Assembly (NCBI RefSeq): GCF_000315625.1
Contig: NW_005434508.1
Span: forward strand, 46,361-110,360
Length of the DNA: 64,000 nt
Origin: Guillardia theta CCMP2712
Lineage: Eukaryota > Protista > Cryptophyta
Direction of reading: 5' to 3'
Positions 39,551 through 64,000 of this stretch are shown in pieces. The position numbers and the translations under genes are program-made. Under the pieces are notes generated by a model. The model was not told the origin of the DNA. It ran no database searches and worked only from the letters and a program-made list of their open reading frames with translations. Numbering within the stretch: the first letter of the stretch is position 1; every line of letters starts with the position of its first letter.

Positions 39551-39737
39551 CGCACGCAGCAGAATCAATGGATATTGCAAAGGATTGATANNNNNNNNNN
39601 NNNNNNNNNNNNNNNNNNNNNNNNNNNNNNNNNNNNNNNNNNNNNNNNNNNNNNNNNNNNNNNNNNNNNNNNNNNNNNNNNNNNNNNNNNGCAAGAGGAG
39701 GGAGGGAGGGAGGAGGGCGGCGTCTGACGGGAAGGGT

Positions 39738-40706
39738 GGGGGTACAGGGATCACTCGATCTTGTTCATGCTGAAGCTGCTGACGATGACGGTGGACGAGA
39801 TCCATGCAGGGATGAAGCAGATGGAGAAGCAGCAGGCGGAGGTAGAGGGGGTGGGGGAGAAGGTAGAGAGGATGTGCAAGGAGCTAGGGGATAGGATGGA
39901 AGCGATGTTCAAGGATGGTGGCAATCAGAAAGGTGAAGCAAAAGTGAAGGTTAGCGGCCTTCATGGTTTGAGATCTATCTCTCCAGTGTCGGTTCGACAG
40001 GTTGTTTTATCGTCTCTTGTCTGGTTTGACGGCTGGGCAGGTTGAGCGGAAGGGACCAGGGGACGGAAGGAAAGTGAAGGAAGAAGTGGCTGATGACGTG
40101 TCACCAGCCAAGTCTGAGGACAAGAAGAAGGCGAAGCAGATGTTGGAAGAGCCCGTGGCTGTGATGGACGACTGGTGTGAGTCTCATACAAGAGCGGCTC
40201 GCGGGGGAAAGGAACTCAAGAAACACAGCTCGCATGTTGAGAAGCGCGTCGTCAAACCCTCCGATGGATCCTCTCATGCTGCTGGGGCCTCTGCTGGGAT
40301 CATCCCAAGAAGCGGCTCACTCAACGACATGACGCGAGTGGCTGCACAACGTCTGGACGGAGAAGGACGGAGACGAGAGGACGAGGAGAAGAAAGGAGAA
40401 GGGAGAGGAGAAGGGAGAGGAGAAGGACGCGAAGGCAAGGGAAGGAGCTCAGCAAAGCTCACGGAGAAGGCCTTGAGCGAGGACATCTTTCAAAAGTCCG
40501 CTGACTCTCTTCTTAGAAAGTTGGACCGATCGCGAAAACCAGGGCAGACGTTGACTACCGTCCATGACCGGAACGGAAGTCATCGGACCAAGAAGAGCGG
40601 GAAAGAATCAGACGCTTTCGCTGACCTGATCCTCCTCCCTCGCACGGTTCAAGACTCGGACGATAGTCAGGTCTCTCAGAGCAAGACGGTGAAGGAAGGC
40701 CACTAG
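39738..40706 (+). CDS. 3' end of a channel paralog (coiled-coil and disordered tail); upstream part in or behind a gap
   Basis: 39697-39913 is the near-identical reverse complement of 41702-41914 (DHSILFMLKLLTMTVDEIHAGMK...MEAMFK), followed by a different tail. Confidence 0.65.
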
Positions 40707-40883: not shown

Positions 40884-43800
40884 TCACATCAAGTGATAGC
40901 CTTCCATCGGGCTCTGCGTGCCCTGCCCAGCAGGACTCCAGCCAGACGGCGACCGGTCGTGCTCGGAAGGCTGCGGAGAAAGCGGAAGGCGGAGAAACTT
41001 TCGCTCCGACATGCTTCGCTCGGCAAGTCTCTCATGCAGGAAGACCATCCTACCGTCCCCGTCGGTGACTGCTGGAGGAGCGCGAACTTGATCGCTGGTT
41101 CCTGTCAGGTGCTGGTACCGCCGCACTTGATAGAACTTGGCGAGAGCTGCCTGATCTATGGGGCTCGCTCTCTCCGGCTCCTGCGCCTTGAGCGAGTTGA
41201 TCCAATGCTCTGCTCCTCTGCTCCTTCCATCTCCGTCTTCGTTCATGTCCAAGGTCCTCGGAGAGCGACCTTCTTCCCTCCTCCTCCTCCTCTCTCCTCG
41301 TCCTCTGACCGAGTCCTGCTCACACGTCAGGCCCATCTTGCCGTCAGGTCATGGACCTGTCGCCGAGGAGAGGAGAGGCTTCCGTTATGCAGCTCCTGCA
41401 GCAGCTTCTGCTTCTGCTCCCCGTGATCTCTGCACGTGCAAACCAGTCAGCTCCGACCGCAACGTGCACCTGCCAACCTGTTGGCCTGCTCCATCCTCAT
41501 GACCGCACTGGGGTACACCATCCGCTCGGGAGAGGAAGGCGATCTCCCGCGAGGAGCTGGAGGACGAGCCTGACCCTCACCCTCCTCTCCCCTCATCGTT
41601 CTGCTCGAAAATCCTTCGATGCCATAAGGGGTCGACGGCGACCTGGTCCTTTCACGATGCTGCAAGTCTTGATCTCGAAGCTCGACGCTACCATACCGAT
41701 TCTTGAACATCGCTTCCATCCTATCCCCTAGCTCCTTGCACATCCTCTCTACCTTCTCCCCCACCCCCTCTACCTCCGCCTGCTGCTTCTCCATATGCTT
41801 CATCCCCGCATGGATCTCGTCCACCGTCATCGTCAGCAGCTTCAGCATGAACAAGATCGAGTGATCCCTGTACCCCCACCCTTCCCGTCAGACGCCGCCC
41901 TCCTCCCTCCCTCCNNNNNNNNNNNNNNNNNNNNNNNNNNNNNNNNNNNNNNNNNNNNNNNNNNNNNNNNNNNNNNNNNNNNNNNNNNNNNNNNNNNNNN
42001 NNNNNNNNNNNNNNNNNNNNNNNNNNNNNNNNNNNNNNNNNNNNTATCGCTTCAGCTCTCCCTTCATCCTGTACCGCCCAAACCATCGTCATCGCCCCGG
42101 GCCCTACGCCCCCTCTCTCTCCTCTTCCCCCCTCCCCCCTTCCCCCCGTCTGCCTGCCCCTCCTCCCTTCCCTCCCCTGCCTCACATGGACTGGAACTGG
42201 TCCGCGTCGAACTCCCCATCCTCCTTGCAAAGGTTTCCTCCCTCCGTGATGATGTCATAGTCGTCCAGCGTCAGATGGATCGGCGTCGGCAGCGGGAGCT
42301 GCTTCAGCCCCGCGTTCAGCTCGTGGAAGTCCAGCCCGCCGCCCCTGCCGCCTCCTCTCAGATGGCAAGTCGCGAGCTCCCCTTCCCTCTTCCTGCTCCC
42401 CTACCCTCATCTGCCTTCTGCTGTCTCTTCCCTTCCCTCTTTCATGCCCTCCCACTGCCTCCCTCTGCCTTACCCGTCGGCGTCAAGCATCGTGTACAGC
42501 TGCTTGATCCGACTCGACAAGTCCACGTTGTCGTTGAACGACGAGATCGACACCAGCAGCGGGGCCAGCACCCCTGAGATCCTCGAAGCCTTCGCCTCCA
42601 GCTCCCGCTGCTCCTGCAGCAGCCTCGCTTGCTCCTCTTTCTCTCGCGTCACCGACGAGATAAACTCGTCCAGCAGCACCGCCACCACGATGTTCACCAG
42701 GATGATCGTCGCTATGATCACGTACGAGATCGAGAAGAGCGCCACCCGCCGGTTCAGGTTCCCTGCCTCCGCGTCGTCCGGCCCAACCTCGTCGAACAGC
42801 GTCCGCGTTACCGAGCTTGCCCACGAGTCTCCCGTCATGATCTGGAACACTGCCATCCTGTACGTTAGTCCTCCCTCCCTTCCTCTCCCCCTCCTCTCCT
42901 CTCCTTACTTGTGCTGTCCCCTCAGTCCAGCCCCGTCCCGCGTCCCCCGCCCACCGCGTCCGCACGCCCCCATCCAGCCCCGCAGCAATGCATAAAACAC
43001 TCCCGTCAGACCCTGATCCGCCTCCCAGCCCCAAGCCCTCCCCCTCTGAGCCTTTCTCTCCTGCTCCCTGCCTGCCCTTCCCCTCATTTCCCTTTCCCTT
43101 CCGCTTCCCAATCCCTCCCTTCTCCTTTCCCTTCCCTCCCTTCCCCTTCCCCTCCTCTGTCCTGCCCCTCTCCTCCCCCGCCCTGCCTCTGCNNNNNNNN
43201 NNNNNNNNNNNNNNNNNNNNNNNNNNNNNNNNNNNNNNNNNNNNNNNNNNNNNNNNNNNNNNNNNNNNNNNNNNNNNNNNNNNNNNNNNNNNCAAGAGCG
43301 ACGCGCTGAAGGACCGAAGAAGTCTTGTTGTAGTCCTTGAACAGATGCGTCCCAGGATCGCGTAGAAGCACGACACCAGCAGCAGCAGCATGAACGCGTT
43401 CATCAGCGGCACCACCGCCCTCCCCAGCGCCGTGATGATTGTGTGCGAGCTCTTCACCTGTCGGAACACAAGCGCTACCCTGTACCTCCCTGTCAGCCTC
43501 CCGTCTCCTCACCAGCCTCGCCCCTCCCTCCTCCTTCCTCCTGACCTGAAGATCCGCACAAGCCCCAACACCTTCAGCTGCGGGTCTGTCTCGAAGGGAG
43601 TGACTACGAGAGAGATGACGACGACCATGAGGTCCATGATGTTCCAGGGGTCTGAGTAGAAGGGCTTGAAGTGGTTCTCGGACATGGCGAACGCTGCTAC
43701 CGACACCTCTACTGTGAAGAAAGCTGTAACAAGTATCCCTACCGTCCTCACAAACAATCCATCGCTTGATGACGCCTCGGGCAGGCTCTCTGCCTCGAAC

Positions 43801-44626
43801 ACATCCACGAAGAAGTTGAGGAAAATCAGCACTGACATCACTGCACACAATCGTCACCATCTTCCTGAAGGTTCAACTTCTCTCATGGGCTTTCCCTCCA
43901 TCTCTTGCTTGCTCTGCTTCTCTTCCTGCCTCCTTCTCGCTGCTTACCTATGTGTGTTGTCCGCGCCTTGATCAGCTTCTTCGCCTTGAAGCGCAGCCAC
44001 AGATACTTGCTGTCCCCGATCTCTTTCAGCGCATTCTCCTTCCGCTTCGCCTTCATCGCCAGCTTCAGCCCCGTCGACATGTCCTTGTGCCATTCCAGGC
44101 ACTCCGCCTCCGTCTTCATCCGATACACGTACGTACGCCCGGAGTTGTGTCCTCCCTCTACCGTGCGGATGATGAGGCAAAGCTTCTCCTCGCGCTCACT
44201 CTTGTTCTCCCCCTCCATCATCAGCTGCACCACCTCATGCAGCGGGATGTAGTCGATCACGGTCTCGTCGTCCTCGATGACGCCATCGTCGTTGAGGAAG
44301 CAGATCATGCGGTCGGTGAGGACGACGCCTTGTGTCTTCCATGTGACGACTGTACCAGCGATCTTCTTCTCGAGGATGCCAGATCGAAGCTGCTTGCCGC
44401 ATTCTCGCAGCTTCAATTCCTCCACCAAGCTTCCATGAATGCTGGGTTCCGAATTTTTTCTCTTCAACAAGTTGAGCGGTGAGTTTGATCCCTTGGGTGC
44501 GCTTGCTGCAGAGGAAGGTTGAAGTTGAGAAGGAGACAAGTCGGACGAGGAGGAAGACGCCTTCATGTCTTCTATCCTCTTGGACATGGCGCGGGACACT
44601 GTAGCAGACGCCACCGCCATTCCCAT
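40884..44626 (-). CDS. Single-domain 6-TM voltage-gated-type cation channel (EukCat/BacNav/CatSper-like) with N-terminal PH domain and C-terminal EF-hand
   Basis: PH LRSGILEKK...RTYVYRMKTEAECLEW; S2-S3 FFTVEV, DPWNIMDLMVV; S4 LKVLGLVRIFRVALVFRQVK; pore FQIMTGDSW; S6 ILVNIVVAVLLDEF; EF-hand LDADG/SGGLDFHEL. Apparent 1-bp deletions next to the gap at ~43300-43355. Confidence 0.85.
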
Positions 44627-52119: not shown

Positions 52120-52448
52120 TGCGCTGGCCTACCTCCGGTCTATGGATCAGATCCTTCCACGTGACTATGGTGTCTTCCCTGCATGCGGCCTCGTCCTCCA
52201 TCGCTTGCGTCTCGCTCTGAGCGCTTGCTTCCGGCCGAAGCACGTCCTGAAGGCCTTTCATCTTTCCAAACGTTCGGTTGCCTTGGTTGACCACTGGCCA
52301 GCTCCAGCCGCCCTGAGGACATGTCAGCTGCCGCAGACAGAGCAAGGAGTAGATGCCGTACCTTGGTGCTGATCGATCGTCTCAAGGACCACGAGCAGGC
52401 CTTGGAGGCTCTGACGAGGACGGGGAGCGCACGGGAAGTAGGAAACAT
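52120..52448 (-). pseudogene. Tandem duplicate (truncated in intron 2) of a small protein with mitochondrial-like presequence
   Basis: Near-identical to 53115-53443; identity ends just after the donor GTAGGCCAGCGCA. Confidence 0.55.
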
Positions 52449-53081: not shown

Positions 53082-53443
53082 CTAGAACTGTTTTATCAGC
53101 ATCGAAAGCAAGAGTGCGCTGGCCTACCTCCGGTCTATGGATCAGATCCTTCCACGTGACTATCGTGTCTTCCCTGCATGTGGCCTCGTCCTCCATCGCT
53201 TGCGTCTCGCTCTGAGCGCTTGCTTCTGGCCGAAGCACGTCCTGAAGGCCTTTCATCTTTCCAAACGTTCGGTTGCCTTGGTTGACCACTGGCCAGCTCC
53301 AGCCGCCCTGAGGACATGTCAGCTGCCGCAGACAGAGCAAGGAGTAGATGCCGTACCTTGGTGCTGATCGATCGTCTCAAGGACCACGAGCAGGCCTTGG
53401 AGGCTCTGACGAGGACGGGGAGCGCACGGGAAGTAGGAAACAT
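53082..53443 (-). CDS. Small hypothetical protein with mitochondrial-like presequence
   Basis: MFPTSRALPVLVRASKACSWSLRRSISTK / GGWSWPVVNQ...WKDLIHRPE / F*; amphipathic Arg/Ser leader without acidic residues. Confidence 0.55.
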
Positions 53444-57027: not shown

Positions 57028-59244
57028 TTGCACAATAAGCATTGCAGCAGCAGCGTTGCACAAAAAGCACAGCAGCCGCGACAAGAGCAGAAAAAGCAAG
57101 GGAGAGCAGCGGGATCGGCGGGAGCACGAGCACGAGCAGCAAGAAGAGAAGAAGAAGAAGAAGAAGAAAGTAAGGAGGAGCAGAGGCAGGAGGAGCCTCG
57201 GAGCAGGAGGAGGAGCAGGAGGTTCATCGCTCACTTCGCTTGTCAGCGTCTTCCGGCATGGTCCACGGCGTTTGACTCAGTGGGCCCAACGAGGACCCTA
57301 CCTCCCCCCAGGAGTTTTTGACCCTAATGACCCGTCCATTTGACGACCTTCAACCAATCATATCCGACCACCCGTCCCAGTGCAACACAAACGACTCGTA
57401 TGGTACCCCACCCTATGAAAGCTTGGACAAATCGGAAAAGTCCGAGTGAACAAGGTGGGGGTGGGGTGTCACTGCCGACGGATGGAGGGTACTGCAATGT
57501 AAGGATGGTACAAAAGTACGGAGTAAATGGACGGGTGCTTGTTTAGCTTCCAGGGTAGGGTACTGCCGCCGGGCTGCCGGGCCGCCGCCGACTCAGCGGC
57601 CGGGCCGGGCCAGCTGAGATCTCGGGGCCCCCGGGGATCAAGTTCACGAAGTCACTAGTAGACTCCCGATGACGGCAGAGAGCAGCACTGAGGGCATTGA
57701 CTCAGCGCGGACTAGGCTAGTCCGGAGGCTTCCCTTAGCCTTTAGAAGGATTAGCATGTTCAGCTAGTAGAAGGTCTGTTCTCTCCTCATGCTGTATTGT
57801 ATGCTACGCTGATCTAGCATCGCTAGTAACACAATGATCACTGTAGATGTCTCACCTCATTTATTTGAGGGATGGAGTGTTAATCTTTCATGGCTCGTTG
57901 GGACGAGAACGAGCGACGTTTGTGAACATGAAGATGCTAGGGAATAAGCTTTAGAGATGGTTTACGATCACAGTTGTCATGGAGGAAAGGCGAAGACCAT
58001 TTTAAGGGTAGGTATCCTTTCGTACCGCAACTCTTCTGAGGAATGTCTTCCAGCGAAAAAGTTTCAAACAGCGATCAGTTCAGTCCCGCACAGTCACTCG
58101 AATTTAATTTCATTAATTCTATCTCCTGACATTGCGAAGTTCATCGAGATGTCTCTCGGATCATGAGCGCTTGGGAGCGTGATGATGGGAGCAGTCAACT
58201 AGCTTATGGTACGTTTTGTCGGTTTTCATGATCTGTCCTGTAAATCCCTGACAGTTTCATTGCCGCATACGGCACAATGAAAATAAAAGTATTCCTTGTT
58301 TTCATGAATGCCTGGCCTGTTCGGATTGAATCATACACGATGCAATGGAATACATCAAAAGCCCTTAGATCAAACTTTCTTGATCATCTTTGTATACGGA
58401 ACCGTGAAAAATGGATAGATCATTGAACAAAGTGAAAAGTGAATAGATCATTGAACAAAGTCAATTCTGTTGGAGCATCGCTCCTATTTATGATTTGTTG
58501 GAGGTGTTCATTCAGTAATGCTATGAGCGATATTTCTGTCTAGACCAATGTTTCCATGTCGTGACTCGCTTCGATGGCTTCAGTGTTAGAAGCTCTCTCC
58601 AACACACACTAAATCACGCACTGTTCTCAATGCCATGAATGTAGTGTTGTTCTAGTCGACCAACTACCCAAAGGAGAGTACATCTTCCATCAGAGCGACT
58701 CGTGACACTCGGTCGCTCTGGACAACCACCAAGTATATTCAAGATACACTCAGATCATCAAATTTGGTTGGAAGGGTGTCTTCATTACCTATGAGTTTCA
58801 GTACATCAAAGACTACCAGCGGAAGAGCCCGAGCCGAACATGTCATCAAGGCCGAAATCAAGCGCTACAGACCCCCTCTCTACATCCAGAAGTTGATCTT
58901 GTGCATTCTGCTGGCGATCTAATGGGTCGGAGGCTCCAACGGTTGTGATGTGCCCAATGCCTGCTGGCTTGATTCTGCGATGCAAGCGCGTCATGGCAAC
59001 ATGCAGTCGGGGGTCATGGGCGAGCTTAGCACGACGCAAGACTTGACATCGGGTCTTGATGCTTCCCGGTCTCTTGTTTCTGTCTCTACCGCAGTTATCA
59101 TCTCGTGCTCTACCTCAACAGCACGCAAAGGCTCGTGGAATGGGAGCTCGCGGACGCTAGAGCGCAGAGGTCGACAAGTTTATTGTCAGATGCAATGCAG
59201 ACTGCAAGGAGCATTGCGTGTTGAGATCAGCGAGAGTCTTCGCA

Positions 59245-60078
59245 TCAGATCTTTGACGCCGTCAAGCTCGCAACGACGGCAAGAAGGACTGTGGCAAAGG
59301 ACGTGGGTGCCGAGCCCATAGCTGCTGAGCTTACTTTGGACACAGGTGTTGTTGCAACCGCTGCTGTCGTGCTCGAGGGACAGCTGGTGTCCGCACAACT
59401 GCCGTCGGCCTTGGACGATGCGATCATAGTATCGAGAGCAGCGCTAGAAAACTCGCAGACGTTGGAGTAGGCGGTCCTCATTGAGCTGCAGCATTGCGCT
59501 ACCTTAGGCTCAGTCGTCGTCGAGGGGCATTGAGAATCAGAAGTGCATCCCACCATCCCTGAGAATGTGAAAGAGGCAAGCGCGCAGTATGTCGCGCAGT
59601 CGGATCCCTTTGCCTTCTGCAATCATGAAACCAGTCACTATGCTACAAGCACGCTACTCTCTGACTTACATTGGTAGTGCACAATGCGTCAATGGATGTC
59701 TTGCATGCTGTAGCGTTGAACGTGGCTAATTGCAGAGTATTATTTAATGATGCAAGGCCTGCATCAGCCACGGTTTGCGACGCACAGCTCCCAAACTTCA
59801 AGATCAAGTCAGGACATCCCCCTATGACAAGCGTCAGCTCAAGTATCTCTCAATCACCCTTGACAGGCATGAGGGAGGTGGATACGCCGCGACGGGAAGA
59901 ACGAGGAGGAAGATGTGAGACAGGAGGAGGAGGAGGTGGTGGTGGTGGTGGTGGCTAAAGAGGAGGAGAGAGGAGAGAGATGGCTACCAGCAGCAGCTTT
60001 CTTCTCTGCTTTGTAGCATGTGCCAGCAAGAGCAGCTGCTACGAGCGTGAGGGATAGAAAGGCTCTCAGGGACAGCAT
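59245..60078 (-). CDS. Small Cys-rich secreted protein, probably GPI-anchored (3 exons)
   Basis: Signal MLSLRAFLSLTLVAAALA; Cys-rich core; Ser/Thr stalk; C-terminal SSAAMGSAPTSFATVLLAVVASLTA hydrophobic tail. Confidence 0.75.
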
Positions 60079-60244
60079 GGCGAGTATCGCAGTTGTAGCG
60101 TTGCCTCTTCTTTGTTTTCTTTATTACCCCTTGGGAACTTTTGAGGGAAGTTAACATGGTCTGAATCACCCTCTGAAATTTGAAGCATCAATAGGGCATG
60201 TTTGTAAGATTTGAAATGTTGCTGAAGTTGAACGAGGCTACTAT

Positions 60245-60386
60245 CAGTCAGTACTGACAAATGATACTACCACTAACTGATGAGCAAAACAAGAGAATTC
60301 TTTATATATTGATATTAAAGTAAGTAACTGGTACAAATATGTTTACCATATATATCACTAATTTACTCATTTGTCAGTACTGACTG
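60245..60386. mobile_element. MITE-like foldback element with perfect 20-bp terminal inverted repeats
   Basis: CAGTCAGTACTGACAAATGA (60245-60264) and TCATTTGTCAGTACTGACTG (60367-60386) enclose an AT-rich interior; no clean TA target duplication. Confidence 0.6.
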
Positions 60387-60454
60387 TGGGTACAAATTAG
60401 TACCAGAGTTTTGAACCTGAAGCATTTCAACGAGCCCTGAAAGATCCAGTCCTT

Positions 60455-61010
60455 GTTTAATATTGAAATTTCATCGGAAGATTTCAGATACTAATTTCGT
60501 GCGAGCTCGAATCTGATAGTAGCCTCGTTCAACTTCAGCAACATTTCAAATTCATTCCGTATTTTGAAACAGGTTTCGGAAAGGGATATTGATATTGAAA
60601 TTTCAACGGAAGATTTCAGATACTAATTTCGTGCGAGCTCGAATCTGATAGTAGCCTCGTTCAACTTCAGCAACATTTCAAATCTTACAAACATGCCCTA
60701 TAGATGCTTCAAATTTCTGAGGGTAATTCAGACCATGTTAACTTCCCTCAAAAGTTTCCAAGGGGTAATAAAGAAGTCAAGAAGAGAACGCTTCAACTGC
60801 GATACTCGCCATGCTGTCCCTGAGACCCGGCCTTTCTATCCCTCATTCCGTATTTTGAAACAGGTTTCGGAAAGGGATGTTGATATTGAAATTTCAACGG
60901 AAGATTTCAGATACCAATTTCGTGCACGCTCCGAGTCGAATCTGATAGTAGCCTCGTTCAAATCTTACAAACATGCTATAAAGAAGAGGCAACGCGTCAA
61001 CTGCGATACT
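60455..61010 (+). repeat. Scrambled direct repeats of the surface-protein upstream region
   Basis: atattgaaatttca.cggaagatttcagatactaatttcgtgc...gaatctgatagtagcctcgttcaa occurs at ~60460, ~60590 and ~60882; an abortive ATGCTGTCCCTGAGA occurs at 60811. Confidence 0.85.
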
Positions 61011-61014
61011 CGCC

Positions 61015-61707
61015 ATGCTGTCCCTGAGAGCCTTTCTATCCCTCACGCTCGTAGCAGCTGCTCTTGCTGGCACATGCTACAAAGCAGAGAAGAAAGCTGC
61101 TGCTGGTAGCCATCTCTCTCCTCTCTCCTCCTCTTTAGCCACCATCTCATCCTCCTCTTCCTCCTCCTGTCTCACATCTTCCTTGCGCGTCGCAAGCCGT
61201 GGCTGATGCAGGCCTTGCATCATTAAACAAGACTCTGCAATCAGCCACGTTCAACGCTACAGCATGCAAGACATCCATTGACGCATTGTGCACTACCAAT
61301 GTAAGTCAGAGAGTAGCGTGCTTGTAGCATAGTGACTGGTTTCATGATTGCAGGAGGCAAAGGGATCCGACTGCGCGACATACTGCGCGCTTGCCTCTTT
61401 CACATTCTCAGGGATGGTGGGATGCACTTCTGATTCTCAATGCCCCTCGACGACGACTGAGCCTAAGGTAGCGCTATGCTGCAGCTCAATGAGGACCGCC
61501 TACTCCAACGTCTGCGAGTTTTCTAGCGCTGCTCTCGATACTATGATCGCATCGTCCAAGGCCGACGGAGGTTGTGCGGACACGACAGCAGCGGTTGCTA
61601 CAACACCTGTGTCCAAAGTAAGCTCAGCAGCTATGGGCTCGGCACCCACGTCCTTTGCCACAGTCCTTCTTGCCGTCGTTGCGAGCTTGACGGCGTCAAA
61701 GATCTGA
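61015..61707 (+). pseudogene. Inverted paralog of the Cys-rich GPI-type protein; deletion removes the intron-1 acceptor and start of exon 2
   Basis: Reverse complement of 59245-60078 but missing ~120 bp at ~61183, so unspliced reading stops at 61206; also a 15-nt in-frame deletion in the last exon. Confidence 0.65.
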
Positions 61708-62811
61708 TGCGAAGACTCTCGCTGATCTCAACACGCAATGCTCCTTGCAGTCTGCATTGCATCTGACAATAAACTTGTCGATTGATTGAAGAAGTGGCTT
61801 GAGACCGAAGAGAGAAGCTTGAGCAGCCAACTGTTTGTTGGATTATTTCAGGTATAGTCAATTCTGTCTATTGTAGAGATTTTGAGACTGTGTTGCTGAT
61901 CAATCTTGATTGAGCTAGTTACATTAGGTTATTCCAGCCTGGGTAGGAGCCGAGGGATCATGCGAGAGAGCAGGCGATGAACGTGTCGGCTTGTTACAGA
62001 AAGGGTAACAGGGATCAGGACAAAGAGCAGTAGCGCAAGGCTCCTGTGAGGAGGACGGCAAGACTCATGCGAGAGCGATACTGCAAAGGCGGCCCGACCG
62101 TTGGCTGGTGGCCCCTGTGGCAGCCGTGCTTCTGCTCTGCTCTCTGCTCTGGTGTACCAACCCGAGTGCCCCCCGGCCTCTGTCTTCGAGCGCCGCAGCA
62201 GTGCTGCTGTCTGACTTCTCTAGCTGGCTCGAAGTTGTCGCCATGGCTGCATGCACTGGGGCCCTGTCCCCCCTTGGGTTTGAAGGGTTGCCCGAGGAGG
62301 TGAGTGGAGGGGTACTATTTGAGGGATAAGGAGGGGTAGTAGTCGGAAACGGTTTCAGTCAAACCTTTTGTTGGGAAGGAAGGGGGGTGTAGAGGCTCTG
62401 GTAACTTATGACGGGAAAGGGGTGGGTGGACAAGGTTTATATGGGGGGTAGTCGAGCAAGGGAAAGTGAAGAGTGATGTGGGTCAAATGAGAGAAGAGGA
62501 TCAGTCATGGCAGCAGTCATGGTGGAAGTAGGGAAAGAGGGAGGAGAGATGGATAGAGGAGAGGAGGAGGGAAAGAGAGATCACAGCAAGAAATGAAGAA
62601 AGACAGAAAGAGAGAGAATTATGAAAGAAAATGAAGAGATTGAATGAAGGGGGAGAGAAGCAGATAGTGTTTGCTGCAGGATGATTTCATTGATTGCGAG
62701 CAAGATCTCTGACAAGATTGAAGCATTTACAGGAAACAAGATTGCACATATGAGGGAAGTTCTTTGAGGGGGAATTCTTGAGTGACAAAACAAGATACTG
62801 ACTGAAAGAAA

Positions 62812-64000
62812 ATGGCTGCATCAGTACCAGTGATTAAAGCAAACCAACAACAATCATCAATGAGAAACGTATCAAAACCATCCCCAGAGATTCGCTCTCT
62901 CGCAAATCTGCAGCATGACAAGACATTCAAACTAGCAGAATGCGGCAAGCAGCTTCGATCTGGCATCCTCGAGAAGAAGATCGCTGGTACAGTCGTCACA
63001 TGGAAGACACAAGGCGTCGTCCTCACCGACCGCATGATCTGCTTCCTCAACGACGATGGCGTCATCGAGGACGACGAGACCGTGATCGACTACATCCCGC
63101 TGCATGAGGTGGTGCAGCTGATGATGGAGGGGGAGAACAAGAGCGAGCGCGAGGAGAAGCTTTGCCTCATCATCCGCACGGTAGAGGGAGGACACAACTC
63201 CGGGCGTACGTACGTGTATCGGATGAAGACGGAGGCGGAGTGCCTGGAATGGCACAAGGACATGTCGACGGGGCTGAAGCTGGCGATGAAGGCGAAGCGG
63301 CAAGAGCAAGAGCTGCAAGAGATCGGGGACAGCAAGTATCTGTGGCTGCGCTTCAAGGCGAAGAAGCTGATCAAGGCGCGGACAACACACATAGGTAAGC
63401 AGTGAGGAGGATGGAAGGAGGCAGGAGGAGAAGAAGCAGGACTGGTAGGGAGGGGAAGAGCAGGACAAGCGAGGGAAGGAGGAAGGAGTGTTGAGATGTG
63501 GTTGCATGTCGTGCTTGATGACATTCGGCAGACACGTCGGTACTGACGGGTGCGTGCAGTGATGTCAGTGCTGATCTTCATCAACTTCTTCGTGGATGTG
63601 TACGAGGCCGAGGAGCTACCATCCGTCTCGTCTCTAGAGGGATGGATAGTCCGACTGGTCGGTATCGTCGTTACAGCTTTCTTCACAGTAGAGGTGTCGG
63701 TAGCAGCGTTCGCCATGTCCGAGAACCACTTCAAGCCCTTCTACTCAGACCCCTGGAACATCATGGACCTCATGGTCGTCGTTGTCTCACTCGTAGTCAC
63801 TCCCTTCGAGACAGACCCGCAGCTGAAGGTGTTGGGGCTTGTGCGGATCTTCAGGTCAGGAGGAAGGAGGAGGGAGGGGCGAGGCTGGTGAGGAGACGGG
63901 AGGCTGACAGGGAGGTACAGGGTAGCGCTTGTGTTCCGACAGGTGAAGAGCTTGAACAGAATCATCACGGCGCTCGGGAGGGCGGTGGTGCCGCTGATGA
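62812..64000 (+). CDS. Second PH-domain single-domain channel paralog (5' part; continues beyond window)
   Basis: 62938-64000 is a reverse-complement homolog of 44404-43400 (PH, S1-S4, S4-S5 linker). Confidence 0.85.

What the first reader, a model, noticed from the sequence alone, without database searches (positions are those of the whole stretch)
40884..44626. Single-domain voltage-gated-type channel fused to a PH domain and an EF-hand, with a charge-reduced S4
Seen: PH, then S1-S4, pore (FQIMTGDSW), S6, EF-hand (DADGSGGLDFHE) and coiled-coil in one 6-TM subunit. Established: single-domain Nav/Cav-like channels (BacNav, CatSper, algal EukCats) have a TxD/ExW filter and a run of every-third-residue Arg in S4; PH domains commonly bind phosphoinositides or G-proteins. 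Here S4 reads K-x-x-G-x-x-R-x-x-R-x-x-L. Inference: a Ca2+-permeable homotetramer gated more by lipid, G-protein or Ca2+ than by voltage. I do not know this domain combination from characterised channels.
Basis: partly seen in the sequence, partly recalled or inferred. Interest (0 to 1): 0.72.

Follow-up and report, generated by a model that had tools for sequence, protein, structure and literature searches.

The report
PH-fused algal channel, charge-poor sensor
This is a real, already annotated but unstudied gene of the cryptophyte alga Guillardia theta for a one-repeat voltage-gated-type cation channel with a PH domain in front and a calcium-sensor-like tail; at least 20 genes in this genome share the design, and this one is unusual mainly because it has lost two of the five voltage-sensing arginines.

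Summary
The finding is the minus-strand gene GUITHDRAFT_120042 of Guillardia theta (840-aa database model P0097, CDS 44626 to 40884).

**Confirmed parts**
- A PH domain, supported by Pfam, an AlphaFold model and 162 PDB PH matches.
- S1-S6 with the filter FQIMTGDSW.
- An EF-hand-like pair, followed by a long predicted helix.

- The EF loop reads DADGGGGLDFHE, with Gly rather than Ser at position 5.
- S4 reads K-G-R-R-L-R-K. The first and fourth of the family's five arginines are lost.
- The gap at 43193-43292 lies in an intron and removes only the donor site.
- The gap at 41915-42044 hides about 17 codons of a small exon.
- Three one-base deletions beside the first gap put 12 codons out of frame. 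This is either an assembly error or decay of this copy.

**Is the fusion real?** Yes. An intronless paralog carries PH, channel and EF-hand in one 612-aa ORF, and transcripts from other cryptophytes show the same layout.

**What it is.** The closest solved single-repeat channel is NavEh (EukCatB1 of Emiliania huxleyi). I read this gene as a cryptophyte EukCatB-type channel with an added PH domain. I found that addition in no paper. This scan has already reported the same family about eight times on other DNA of this genome.

Gating by lipid or Ca2+ rather than voltage remains untested.

The parts
43948..44626 (-). Exon 1. It holds the start ATG at 44626, a predicted N-terminal helix (residues 5-23), a Ser-rich disordered linker, the PH domain (residues about 70-185) and a long linker helix leading into S1.
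   Evidence: Pfam PH E 1.8e-5. AlphaFold pLDDT 83, and Foldseek matches to PH folds. The exon 1/2 junction is the same in database models P0097 and P0041.
43546..43840 (-). Exon 2. It holds S1, S2 (F-x-x-E kept; the family's conserved Asn four residues after the Glu is Ala here), S3 (D-P-W-N-x-x-D) and the first half of S4 (K, Gly at R1, R2, R3).
   Evidence: Ion_trans E 8.3e-9. Family alignment.
43294..43479 (-). Exon 3. It holds the second half of S4 (Leu at R4, R5, K), the S4-S5 linker (SSHTI here, SLNRI in sister copies) and S5. Three one-base deletions at about 43313, 43322 and 43350 put 12 codons out of frame.
   Evidence: Ion_trans E 2.6e-4. DNA alignments. DNA-run contigs carry the three extra letters.
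43193..43292 (.). Assembly gap at the start of intron 3. Only the donor site is lost, and the true gap seems to be about 3 letters.
   Evidence: Loose end of an X3 contig at 43293, compared with the left flank of the gap and with the C292 copy.
42474..42857 (-). Exon 4. It holds the pore helix, the filter FQIMTGDSWAS, S6, the post-S6 helix and the first four residues (DADG) of the EF loop.
   Evidence: Ion_trans E 5.1e-6. The best PDB match is the pore of Cav3 domain IV, with NavEh also matching.
42186..42344 (-). Exon 5. It holds the rest of the EF loop (full loop DADGGGGLDFHE) and a second, non-canonical EF-like helix-loop-helix.
   Evidence: Same junction as in P0097. CDPK EF-hand E 3e-4 and a plastin EF pair.
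42045..42068 (-). Start of small exon 5b (MKGELKR...), which runs into the gap. The database model does not include it.
   Evidence: Translation. Sister copies read on. The family consensus is QFQxMMxxELxxYAQR.
41915..42044 (.). Assembly gap that hides about 17 codons of exon 5b, its donor site and part of the next intron. A DNA contig confirms the length of 130.
   Evidence: X2 record 2 spans the gap with 130 letters.
41697..41867 (-). Exon 6. It encodes a long amphipathic helix, the putative coiled coil.
   Evidence: Conserved in C292 and C26. AlphaFold helix 555-617. The stretch 41699-41914 is 99% complementary to 39701-39916.
40884..41641 (-). Three further exons of database model P0097 (about 41477-41641, 41357-41428 and 40884-41315, including the stop). 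They encode a disordered tail that is not conserved and is unverified.
   Evidence: Mapping of P0097 onto the window. pLDDT is about 30. The C292 copy diverges after KELGD.

Best explanation
The gene encodes one subunit of a homotetrameric cation channel of the single-repeat Nav/Cav type. It belongs to the cryptophyte branch of what Helliwell et al. call EukCatB.

**Order of parts**
1. A short N-terminal helix on a disordered tether.
2. A PH domain whose C-terminal helix runs on towards S1.
3. The voltage-sensor domain.
4. A pore with an Asp filter (TGDSWAS).
5. S6 with a long cytoplasmic extension.
6. An EF-hand-like pair.
7. A long helix.

**What is shown.** The architecture is real, the gene is a family member, and it has lost two S4 charges.

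**What is inferred**
- The pore passes Ca2+ as well as Na+.
- The sensor still responds to voltage, but with less gating charge, so a shallower or shifted activation curve.
- The PH domain and EF tail tune gating or placement at a membrane, rather than replacing voltage.

The window copy is one of four or five recent copies: two on this contig, two on contig C292, and one exon fragment. Its local frame damage next to a gap is more likely an assembly error than real decay.
For: **Identity**
- The window is Guillardia theta contig C166. The gene is GUITHDRAFT_120042 / XP_005820754.1 (P0097), and P0097 maps exon by exon onto 44626-40884.

**The fusion is real**
- The intronless paralog on C47 has PH, Ion_trans and EF-hand in one 612-aa ORF.
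- The C26 paralog has PH and S1-S4 in one open frame.
- Proteins predicted from Hanusia, Hemiselmis and Geminigera transcripts, and other G. theta gene models, carry PH plus Ion_trans.
- 20 of 25 PH matches in the genome lie 0.5-1.6 kb upstream of a channel match on the same strand.
- This PH type is found only with channel and EF-hand domains. There are 60 representatives among 1.84 billion proteins, and 51 of them scanned showed no other Pfam family.

**Family placement**
- NavEh (7x5v, 8j7f) is the best solved single-repeat match, at E 4.5e-20. No bacterial Nav reaches E 1e-10.
- NavEh has an N-helix, an EF-like tail and five gating charges (PMC9114117).

**Filter**
- The E305D mutant of EhEUKCATB1 has the same TGDSW motif and conducts Ca2+ and Ba2+ (10.1101/2020.04.29.068528).

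**S4**
- This gene has Gly at R1 and Leu at R4. In 26 of 26 other family members R1 is Arg and R4 is Arg or Lys. The other G. theta paralogs whose S4 I could read keep both charges.
- The C26 paralog has Gly and Ile.
- The sister lineage P0052 keeps all the charges, and the tree supports that sister relationship at 99/97.

**Constraint**
- dN/dS against C26 is 0.16 over 528 codons.
Against: - I obtained no RNA evidence for this copy. The one RNA run with raw reads gave 0 reads from about 6% of the run, which is no test.
- Three frame-shifting deletions and a changed S4-S5 linker (SSHTI instead of the conserved SLNRI) are unique to this copy. No DNA-run contig showed the window's version at those places.
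- dN/dS among the recent copies is 0.36-0.62, so constraint may be relaxed.
- The EF loop has Gly at position 5, and Pfam finds no EF-hand in this protein.
- The PH domain lacks the canonical beta2 Arg.
- No phylogeny with named EukCatA, B or C sequences could be run.
Confidence: 0.7

Rival explanations
1. One reading: the voltage sensor is vestigial. The channel is opened mainly by a ligand of the PH domain (a phosphoinositide or G-protein subunit) and/or by Ca2+ at the EF-hand.
For: - Two of five S4 arginines and the conserved S2 Asn are lost only in this subclade.
- The best Foldseek matches include the GRK2 PH domain, which binds G-beta-gamma and lipid, and inositol-phosphate-bound PH domains.
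- EhEUKCATB1 currents needed Ca2+ (10.1101/2020.04.29.068528).
Against: - Three Arg, two Lys and the F/E/D charge-transfer residues remain.
- The canonical PH beta2 Arg is Gln here, and the EF loop is degenerate. The supposed ligand sites are therefore weaker in this gene than in its fully charged relatives.
- No functional data exist.
Confidence: 0.15
2. The window copy is a decaying duplicate, a young pseudogene. Function, if any, resides in sister copies such as those on C292 or in the C26 paralog.
For: - There are three one-base deletions (12 codons misread) and three substitutions in the conserved S4-S5 linker, all unique to this copy.
- The gene is multi-copy with inverted duplicates and an orphan exon-6 fragment.
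- dN/dS among the copies is 0.36-0.62.
- No RNA reads were laid on the stretch.
Against: - There is no stop codon in any exon, and the net frame is kept.
- The deletions sit in short base runs within 60 nt of an assembly gap, where contig ends are of low quality.
- Splice sites are intact wherever they can be read.
- The DNA-run contigs covering the spot all show the intact version, though they fit the sister copy equally well.
Confidence: 0.2
3. Gene-model artefact: the PH exon belongs to a separate upstream gene, and the channel starts at S1.
For: Only that no transcript of this copy was seen.
Against: - The intron is 107 nt, has GT-AG ends and keeps the phase.
- The same junction is used in two independent database models.
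- PH and channel lie in one ORF in the intronless C47 paralog and in C26.
- This PH type occurs only with channels.
Confidence: 0.02

Closest known systems
NavEh / EhEUKCATB1 (Emiliania huxleyi EukCatB; PDB 7x5v, 8j7f; PMC9114117; 10.1101/2020.04.29.068528)
   Same: - It is a single 6-TM repeat, expected to form a homotetramer.
[quoted passage not shown]
- It is the best solved single-repeat sequence match (E 4.5e-20).
   Different: - It has no PH domain.
- Its filter has Glu (Na+-selective), where this gene has Asp.
- It has five S4 gating charges, where this gene has three Arg plus flanking Lys.
- It is 542 aa, against about 840 aa for this gene's database model.
Diatom EukCatA channels (PMC6509283)
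   Same: They are single-repeat eukaryotic channels. Some have Asp at filter position 0, and they are permeable to Na+ and Ca2+.
   Different: They form a different clade, with no PH domain reported and no EF tail described. I ran no tree with these sequences.
Bacterial Nav/Cav channels (NavAb, NaChBac, CavAb)
   Same: They share the same fold and also have a C-terminal helix after S6. Asp-rich filters make them Ca2+-selective.
   Different: - They are prokaryotic.
- They have four S4 Arg.
- They lack PH and EF-hand domains.
- They are weaker sequence matches than NavEh.
CatSper subunits
   Same: They are single-repeat, have an Asp filter and are Ca2+-permeable. They are called weakly voltage-gated in PMC6509283; that some subunits have fewer S4 charges is from my own knowledge.
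   Different: They are animal sperm heterotetramers with many auxiliary subunits and no PH domain. Relatedness was not tested here.
T-type Ca2+ channels (Cav3), domain IV pore
   Same: They are the best PDB sequence match for the pore exon (E 1.5e-16). The pore motif is TGDNW, against TGDSW here.
   Different: They are four-repeat animal channels. The resemblance is confined to the pore and S6.
PH domains of GRK2, Btk, Akt1, ArhGAP9 and Slm1
   Same: They share the same fold (Foldseek E 8e-6 to 1e-4). This gene also has basic residues at the end of beta1 (KK) and the start of beta2 (K).
   Different: Sequence identity is only 10-26%. The beta2 Arg that I recall as essential in Akt1 (from memory) is Gln here. 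This PH clade occurs only on channels.

Membership tests
Ion_trans (PF00520) single-repeat voltage-gated-type channel | Six TM segments with an S1-S4 sensor and an S5-P-S6 pore in one repeat | tested here: met
   P0097 matches Ion_trans at E 1e-23 over residues 223-446. Each of three exons matches on its own. The AlphaFold model has helices S1-S6.
EukCatB (Helliwell 2019/2020) | Placement in clade B together with haptophyte, cryptophyte and pelagophyte sequences | tested here: inconclusive
   The organism is a cryptophyte. NavEh, which by my own identification is EhEUKCATB1, is the best solved single-repeat match. No named EukCatA, B or C sequences were available for a tree, and the supplementary ID tables are not held.
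EukCatB (Helliwell 2019/2020) | Coccolithophore-type Na+-selective filter TGESWSE with Glu at position 0 | tested here: not met
   The filter is TGDSWAS, with Asp at position 0, as it is throughout the cryptophyte family. The papers define the clade by phylogeny, not by this motif.
EukCatB (Helliwell 2019/2020) | C-terminal EF-hand pair and helix (present in EhEUKCATB1) | tested here: met
   An EF-like pair is found by phmmer against CDPK and plastin. The model has helix-loop-helix elements at 490-556 and a long helix at 555-617. 17 of 25 relatives match Pfam EF-hand_1 at E<0.01, and 18 match EF-hand_7.
Canonical voltage sensor (NavEh-like) | Five regularly spaced S4 Arg/Lys gating charges | tested here: not met
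   R1 is Gly and R4 is Leu. In 26 of 26 relatives R1 is Arg and R4 is Arg or Lys, and the other G. theta paralogs whose S4 I could read keep both charges.
Canonical voltage sensor (NavEh-like) | Charge-transfer centre: S2 Phe and Glu, S3 Asp | tested here: met
   F268, E271 and D296 are invariant alignment columns and are present in P0097. The conserved S2 Asn is Ala here.
PH domain (PF00169) | Seven-stranded beta sandwich capped by a C-terminal helix; Pfam match above the cut-off | tested here: met
   The exon alone scores 25.6 bits against a cut-off of 25.1. The whole protein scores 22.5 bits, below the cut-off. The AlphaFold model has the right fold, and there are 162 PDB matches at E<=0.001, the 50 best listed all PH-domain structures.
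Phosphoinositide-binding PH domain | Basic motif K-Xn-(K/R)-X-R across beta1 and beta2 | tested here: not met
   This gene has EKK...W-K-T-Q, so the last Arg is Gln. Most relatives have W-x-P-R. Binding by another surface is not excluded.
Canonical EF-hand | A 12-residue loop with oxygen ligands at positions 1, 3, 5, 9 and 12, and Gly at position 6 | tested here: inconclusive
   DADGGGGLDFHE has D1, D3, G5, G6, D9 and E12. The ligand at position 5 is missing. There is no Pfam EF-hand at E<0.1, but a CDPK EF-hand matches at E 3e-4. The Gly at position 5 is shared with C26 and P0052.
C-terminal coiled coil (BacNav-like) | A heptad-repeat helix forming a four-helix bundle | not tested
   There is only a predicted long helix, 555-617, at pLDDT 38-75. 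No coiled-coil predictor or tetramer model was run.

The most novel reading that the evidence does not exclude
In this subclade the voltage sensor may have been repurposed. With Gly at R1 and Leu at R4, plus a changed S2, the S1-S4 domain would no longer drive gating. Either it leaks ions itself, as a natural gating-pore ('omega') path like those caused by R1-to-small-residue mutations in animal channels (my own knowledge), or it hands control to the PH domain and EF tail. The second case would give a lipid- or Ca2+-gated Ca2+ entry channel built on a bacterial-Nav scaffold in a phototactic alga.
Probability: 0.12. Interest if true: 0.75.

Novelty: new variant of a known kind. Interest (0 to 1): 0.45.

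Why it matters
Single-repeat eukaryotic Nav/Cav-type channels (EukCats) are a recent discovery. Only a few coccolithophore and diatom members have been recorded, and one has been solved.

Cryptophytes turn out to have dozens of them, and most carry a PH domain that the EukCat papers I searched never mention. That gives a natural set of experiments on how a membrane-lipid or protein-binding module is coupled to a minimal voltage-gated channel.

This gene and its close copies add a natural loss of two gating charges on a fully charged family background. It could be used to ask how much charge such a sensor needs.

The value of this particular report is limited for two reasons. The same family has already been reported several times by this scan on other DNA of this genome. 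The window copy is also damaged or mis-assembled.

Tried and rejected
- **RNA support.** The only RNA run with raw reads (X6) laid 0 reads from about 6% of the run, and the tool itself calls this no test. The other runs are DNA-like contigs that include introns.
- **DNA-run contigs at 43293-43583.** They fit the sister copy on C292 as well as a corrected window copy would, so they cannot settle whether the three deletions are real.
- **Supplementary ID tables.** Those of the two EukCat papers are not held, so I could not check whether this gene was listed as an EukCatB.
- **The search for homologous proteins.** With P0097 it returned only 6 hits, limited by the word index, and no haptophyte sequences. 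No rooted tree with named EukCat classes was therefore possible.
- **Bacterial promoter/terminator scan.** It is irrelevant for a eukaryote and found nothing.
- **Complex prediction.** Not sent. Tetramer formation rests on homology, and a pass would not have changed my odds.
- **Joining exons.** Exons were searched one by one by reference. Whole-protein work used the database model P0097 and the intronless paralog ORF by reference.
- **PH exon as a separate gene.** Rejected; see the rival explanations.
Full report
**What and where**

The window is contig C166:46361-110360 of an 87.1-Mb, 669-contig genome. Protein matches name it as Guillardia theta CCMP2712.

The finding's span is exactly the CDS of an annotated gene: GUITHDRAFT_120042 / XP_005820754.1 / UniRef100_L1ID07. 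It is 840 aa and is held here as P0097. UniProt names it 'EF-hand domain-containing protein'. P0097 maps onto the minus strand in nine exons from 44626 to 40884.

I rebuilt the first six exons independently from the three-frame translation and the GT-AG sites. They agree with P0097 except at the two gaps described below.

Exons were searched one at a time by reference. Whole-protein analyses used the database protein P0097 or the intronless paralog ORF by reference.

**The gaps and the frame (tested first, as asked)**

*Gap 43193-43292.*
- It starts one base into intron 3.
- Exon 3 ends ...SFSASL(L) at 43294, as it does in the C292 copy and the C26 paralog, where GTAAG follows.
- A contig of DNA run X3 ends at 43293 with a loose end reading CCCCGCCCTGCCTCTGC-TTA. 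Its first 17 letters repeat the window's letters just left of the gap.
- The two flanks therefore almost abut, and only the donor site is missing.
- The database model copes by using a cryptic donor. This drops SFSASL.

*Gap 41915-42044.*
- It is spanned by a DNA contig carrying 130 letters, so its length is right.
- It cuts a small exon that starts at 42068 with (M)MKGELKR.
- Sister copies continue YAQRC(V/A)AN(A/T)MSETER(K/Q)E and then GT.
- About 17 codons are hidden, and P0097 skips this exon.

*Frame damage in exon 3.*
- Within 60 nt of the first gap, the window lacks one base in each of three short runs, compared with both C292 copy A and C26.
- Twelve codons are misread, and the frame then recovers.
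- All DNA-run contigs that cover the spot carry the three extra letters. They fit the C292 sister copy just as well, so this is not proof for the window copy.
- In the AlphaFold model of P0097, pLDDT dips below 55 around this segment.

**The parts**

*PH domain.*
- Pfam PF00169 matches the exon at E 1.8e-5.
- An AlphaFold model built with 18 family sequences has mean pLDDT 83, with seven strands and a long C-terminal helix.
- Foldseek finds 162 PDB chains at E<=0.001. The 50 best listed are all PH-domain structures: GRK2, Btk, ArhGAP9, Slm1, DAPP1, TAPP1 and Akt1.

*Channel core.*
- Ion_trans matches at E 1e-23.
- The filter is FQIMTGDSWAS.

*S4.*
- It reads K-V-L-G-L-V-R-I-F-R-V-A-L-V-F-R-Q-V-K.
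- The family consensus is K-x-x-R-L-I-R-V-F-R-V-A-R-I-F-R-R-L-K. Against it, the first and fourth arginines are Gly and Leu.

*Tail.*
- The EF loop crosses the exon 4/5 junction as DADGGGGLDFHE.
- A second, non-canonical EF-like unit follows, then a long helix.
- The last 220 residues or so of P0097 are predicted to be disordered. They are not conserved between copies and are unverified.

**Is the fusion real?**

Yes.
- A paralog on C47 has no introns and carries PH, Ion_trans and a canonical EF loop (DIDKSGGLSFKE) in one 612-aa ORF.
- In the gap-free C26 paralog, PH and S1-S4 lie in one open frame with the same exon layout.
- Proteins predicted from transcripts of Hanusia phi, Hemiselmis andersenii and Geminigera cryophila, and other G. 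theta gene models, show the same layout. 11 of 25 relatives match Pfam PH at E<0.01, and most align through the PH region.
- In this genome, 20 of 25 PH matches lie 0.5-1.6 kb upstream of a channel match on the same strand.
- The PH type is rare and channel-specific. Only 60 cluster representatives among 1.84 billion reach E<=0.001. In 51 of them scanned, the only other Pfam families are Ion_trans/PKD_channel and EF-hands.

**Family placement**

- Among solved structures, NavEh is the best single-repeat match (E 4.5e-20). It beats every bacterial Nav, none of which reaches 1e-10.
- NavEh is the Emiliania huxleyi channel that I take to be the one Helliwell et al. recorded as EhEUKCATB1. The two papers do not cross-reference each other in the text I read.
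- The pore exon on its own is closest to Cav3 domain IV, which has TGDNW.
- Helliwell et al. place cryptophyte single-repeat channels in EukCatB (PMC6509283).
- They describe EhEUKCATB1 as ion-transport domain plus coiled coil plus EF-hand pair. They also show that changing its filter from TGESWSE to TGDSWSE lets Ca2+ and Ba2+ through (10.1101/2020.04.29.068528).
- The EF tail is therefore known in this family. The Asp filter predicts a channel permeable to both Na+ and Ca2+, which is an inference.
- 'PH domain' and 'pleckstrin' do not occur in those two papers. 'PH domain' does not occur in the 2024 diatom survey. Two further full-text searches found no paper on a PH-bearing channel of this kind.
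- I could not build a tree with named EukCatA, B and C sequences.

**What is special about this gene**

- In an ML tree of 28 family members, the window gene and its C292 copy are sister to an environmental cluster, P0052/P0102, with support 99/97 and a long stem.
- P0052 keeps all the S4 charges. It shares the DADGGG EF loop and W-K-P-Q in PH strand beta2.
- The S4 losses therefore arose after that split.
- They are shared by the C292 copy A and by the second copy at the window's end, and by C26 (Gly and Ile). A Hanusia transcript (P0043) appears to have His at R4.
- All other G. theta paralogs whose S4 could be read keep Arg or Lys at all five positions.
- The subclade has also replaced the conserved S2 Asn, but it keeps the S2 Phe and Glu and the S3 Asp.
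- dN/dS against C26 is 0.16, so the charge-poor sensor has been kept under selection.
- Among the recent copies dN/dS is 0.36-0.62, with patchy divergence between exons. That is compatible with relaxed constraint or with gene conversion.

**Mechanism, with the inferred steps marked**

- Shown: the architecture, the family, the Asp filter, the loss of two S4 charges and the intact charge-transfer residues.
- Inferred from homologs: a homotetramer, Na+/Ca2+ permeability, and reduced but not abolished voltage dependence.
- Speculative:
  - The PH domain, tied to S1 by a continuous helix, and the EF pair modulate gating or anchoring.
  - The N-terminal helix on a roughly 45-residue disordered tether acts as an inactivation ball, as in NavEh (PMC9114117). 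It is predicted only at low confidence (pLDDT 45-50).
- In this gene both supposed ligand sites are weaker than in its relatives: Gln at the canonical PH Arg, and Gly at EF position 5. This does not favour the idea that ligand control has replaced voltage control.

**Novelty and score**

- The gene is annotated, and its domains are visible to automatic annotation.
- The EF tail and single-repeat design are published for EukCatB.
- The PH fusion and the charge-poor subclade are, as far as I could search, undescribed.
- This scan has already reported the PH-channel family at least eight times on other DNA of this genome, including one copy with a 'half-neutralised S4'.
- I file it as a new variant of a known kind, of moderate interest.

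Noticed in passing
window 62925-64000 (+): A second copy of the same gene (PH exon 96% identical, S1-S4 exon 88%) runs off the contig end. It is annotated as GUITHDRAFT_120051 (P0041, 288 aa). Contig C292 holds two more copies (P0116 is GUITHDRAFT_122197). This recent, partly inverted amplification probably broke the assembly here.
   Followed up: partly
window 39701-39916 (+) and 41699-41914 (-): This is a 216-nt inverted repeat, 99% complementary, covering exon 6 of the channel gene. Both arms abut assembly gaps (39591-39690 and 41915-42044). No other channel exon lies upstream of the plus-strand arm, so it is either an orphan exon copy or a mis-assembly.
   Followed up: partly
window 59171-61781: There are nested inverted repeats of 189-400 nt, 95-100% complementary, forming a palindrome-like block of about 2.6 kb that lies 1.1 kb upstream of gene copy 2. 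Its nature is unknown; it could be a transposon with inverted ends or an assembly fold-back.
   Followed up: no
window 52120-52419 and 53115-53414: Two direct copies of a 300-nt stretch, 99% identical and 995 nt apart.
   Followed up: no
P0011 (Geminigera cryophila) and P0012 (metagenome): In these family members, the alignment places about 130-150 extra residues, holding EF-hand-like loops (DKDNSSCLDKAE, DPDGSGTLDWEE), inside the PH region. This looks like a split PH domain with an inserted EF pair.
   Followed up: no
P0139 (MGB1597082.1, 'MAG: ion transporter, partial [Promethearchaeia archaeon]'): This 563-aa protein, from a 1.7-kb contig of an Asgard-archaeon MAG, shares a cluster with the eukaryote-type PH-channel P0047 (the collection is grouped at 90% identity). 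It is most likely a mis-binned eukaryotic contig.
   Followed up: no
window 43441-43447: Three substitutions within 7 nt change the conserved S4-S5 linker motif SLNRI to SSHTI, in this copy only. No DNA-run contig showed this version.
   Followed up: partly
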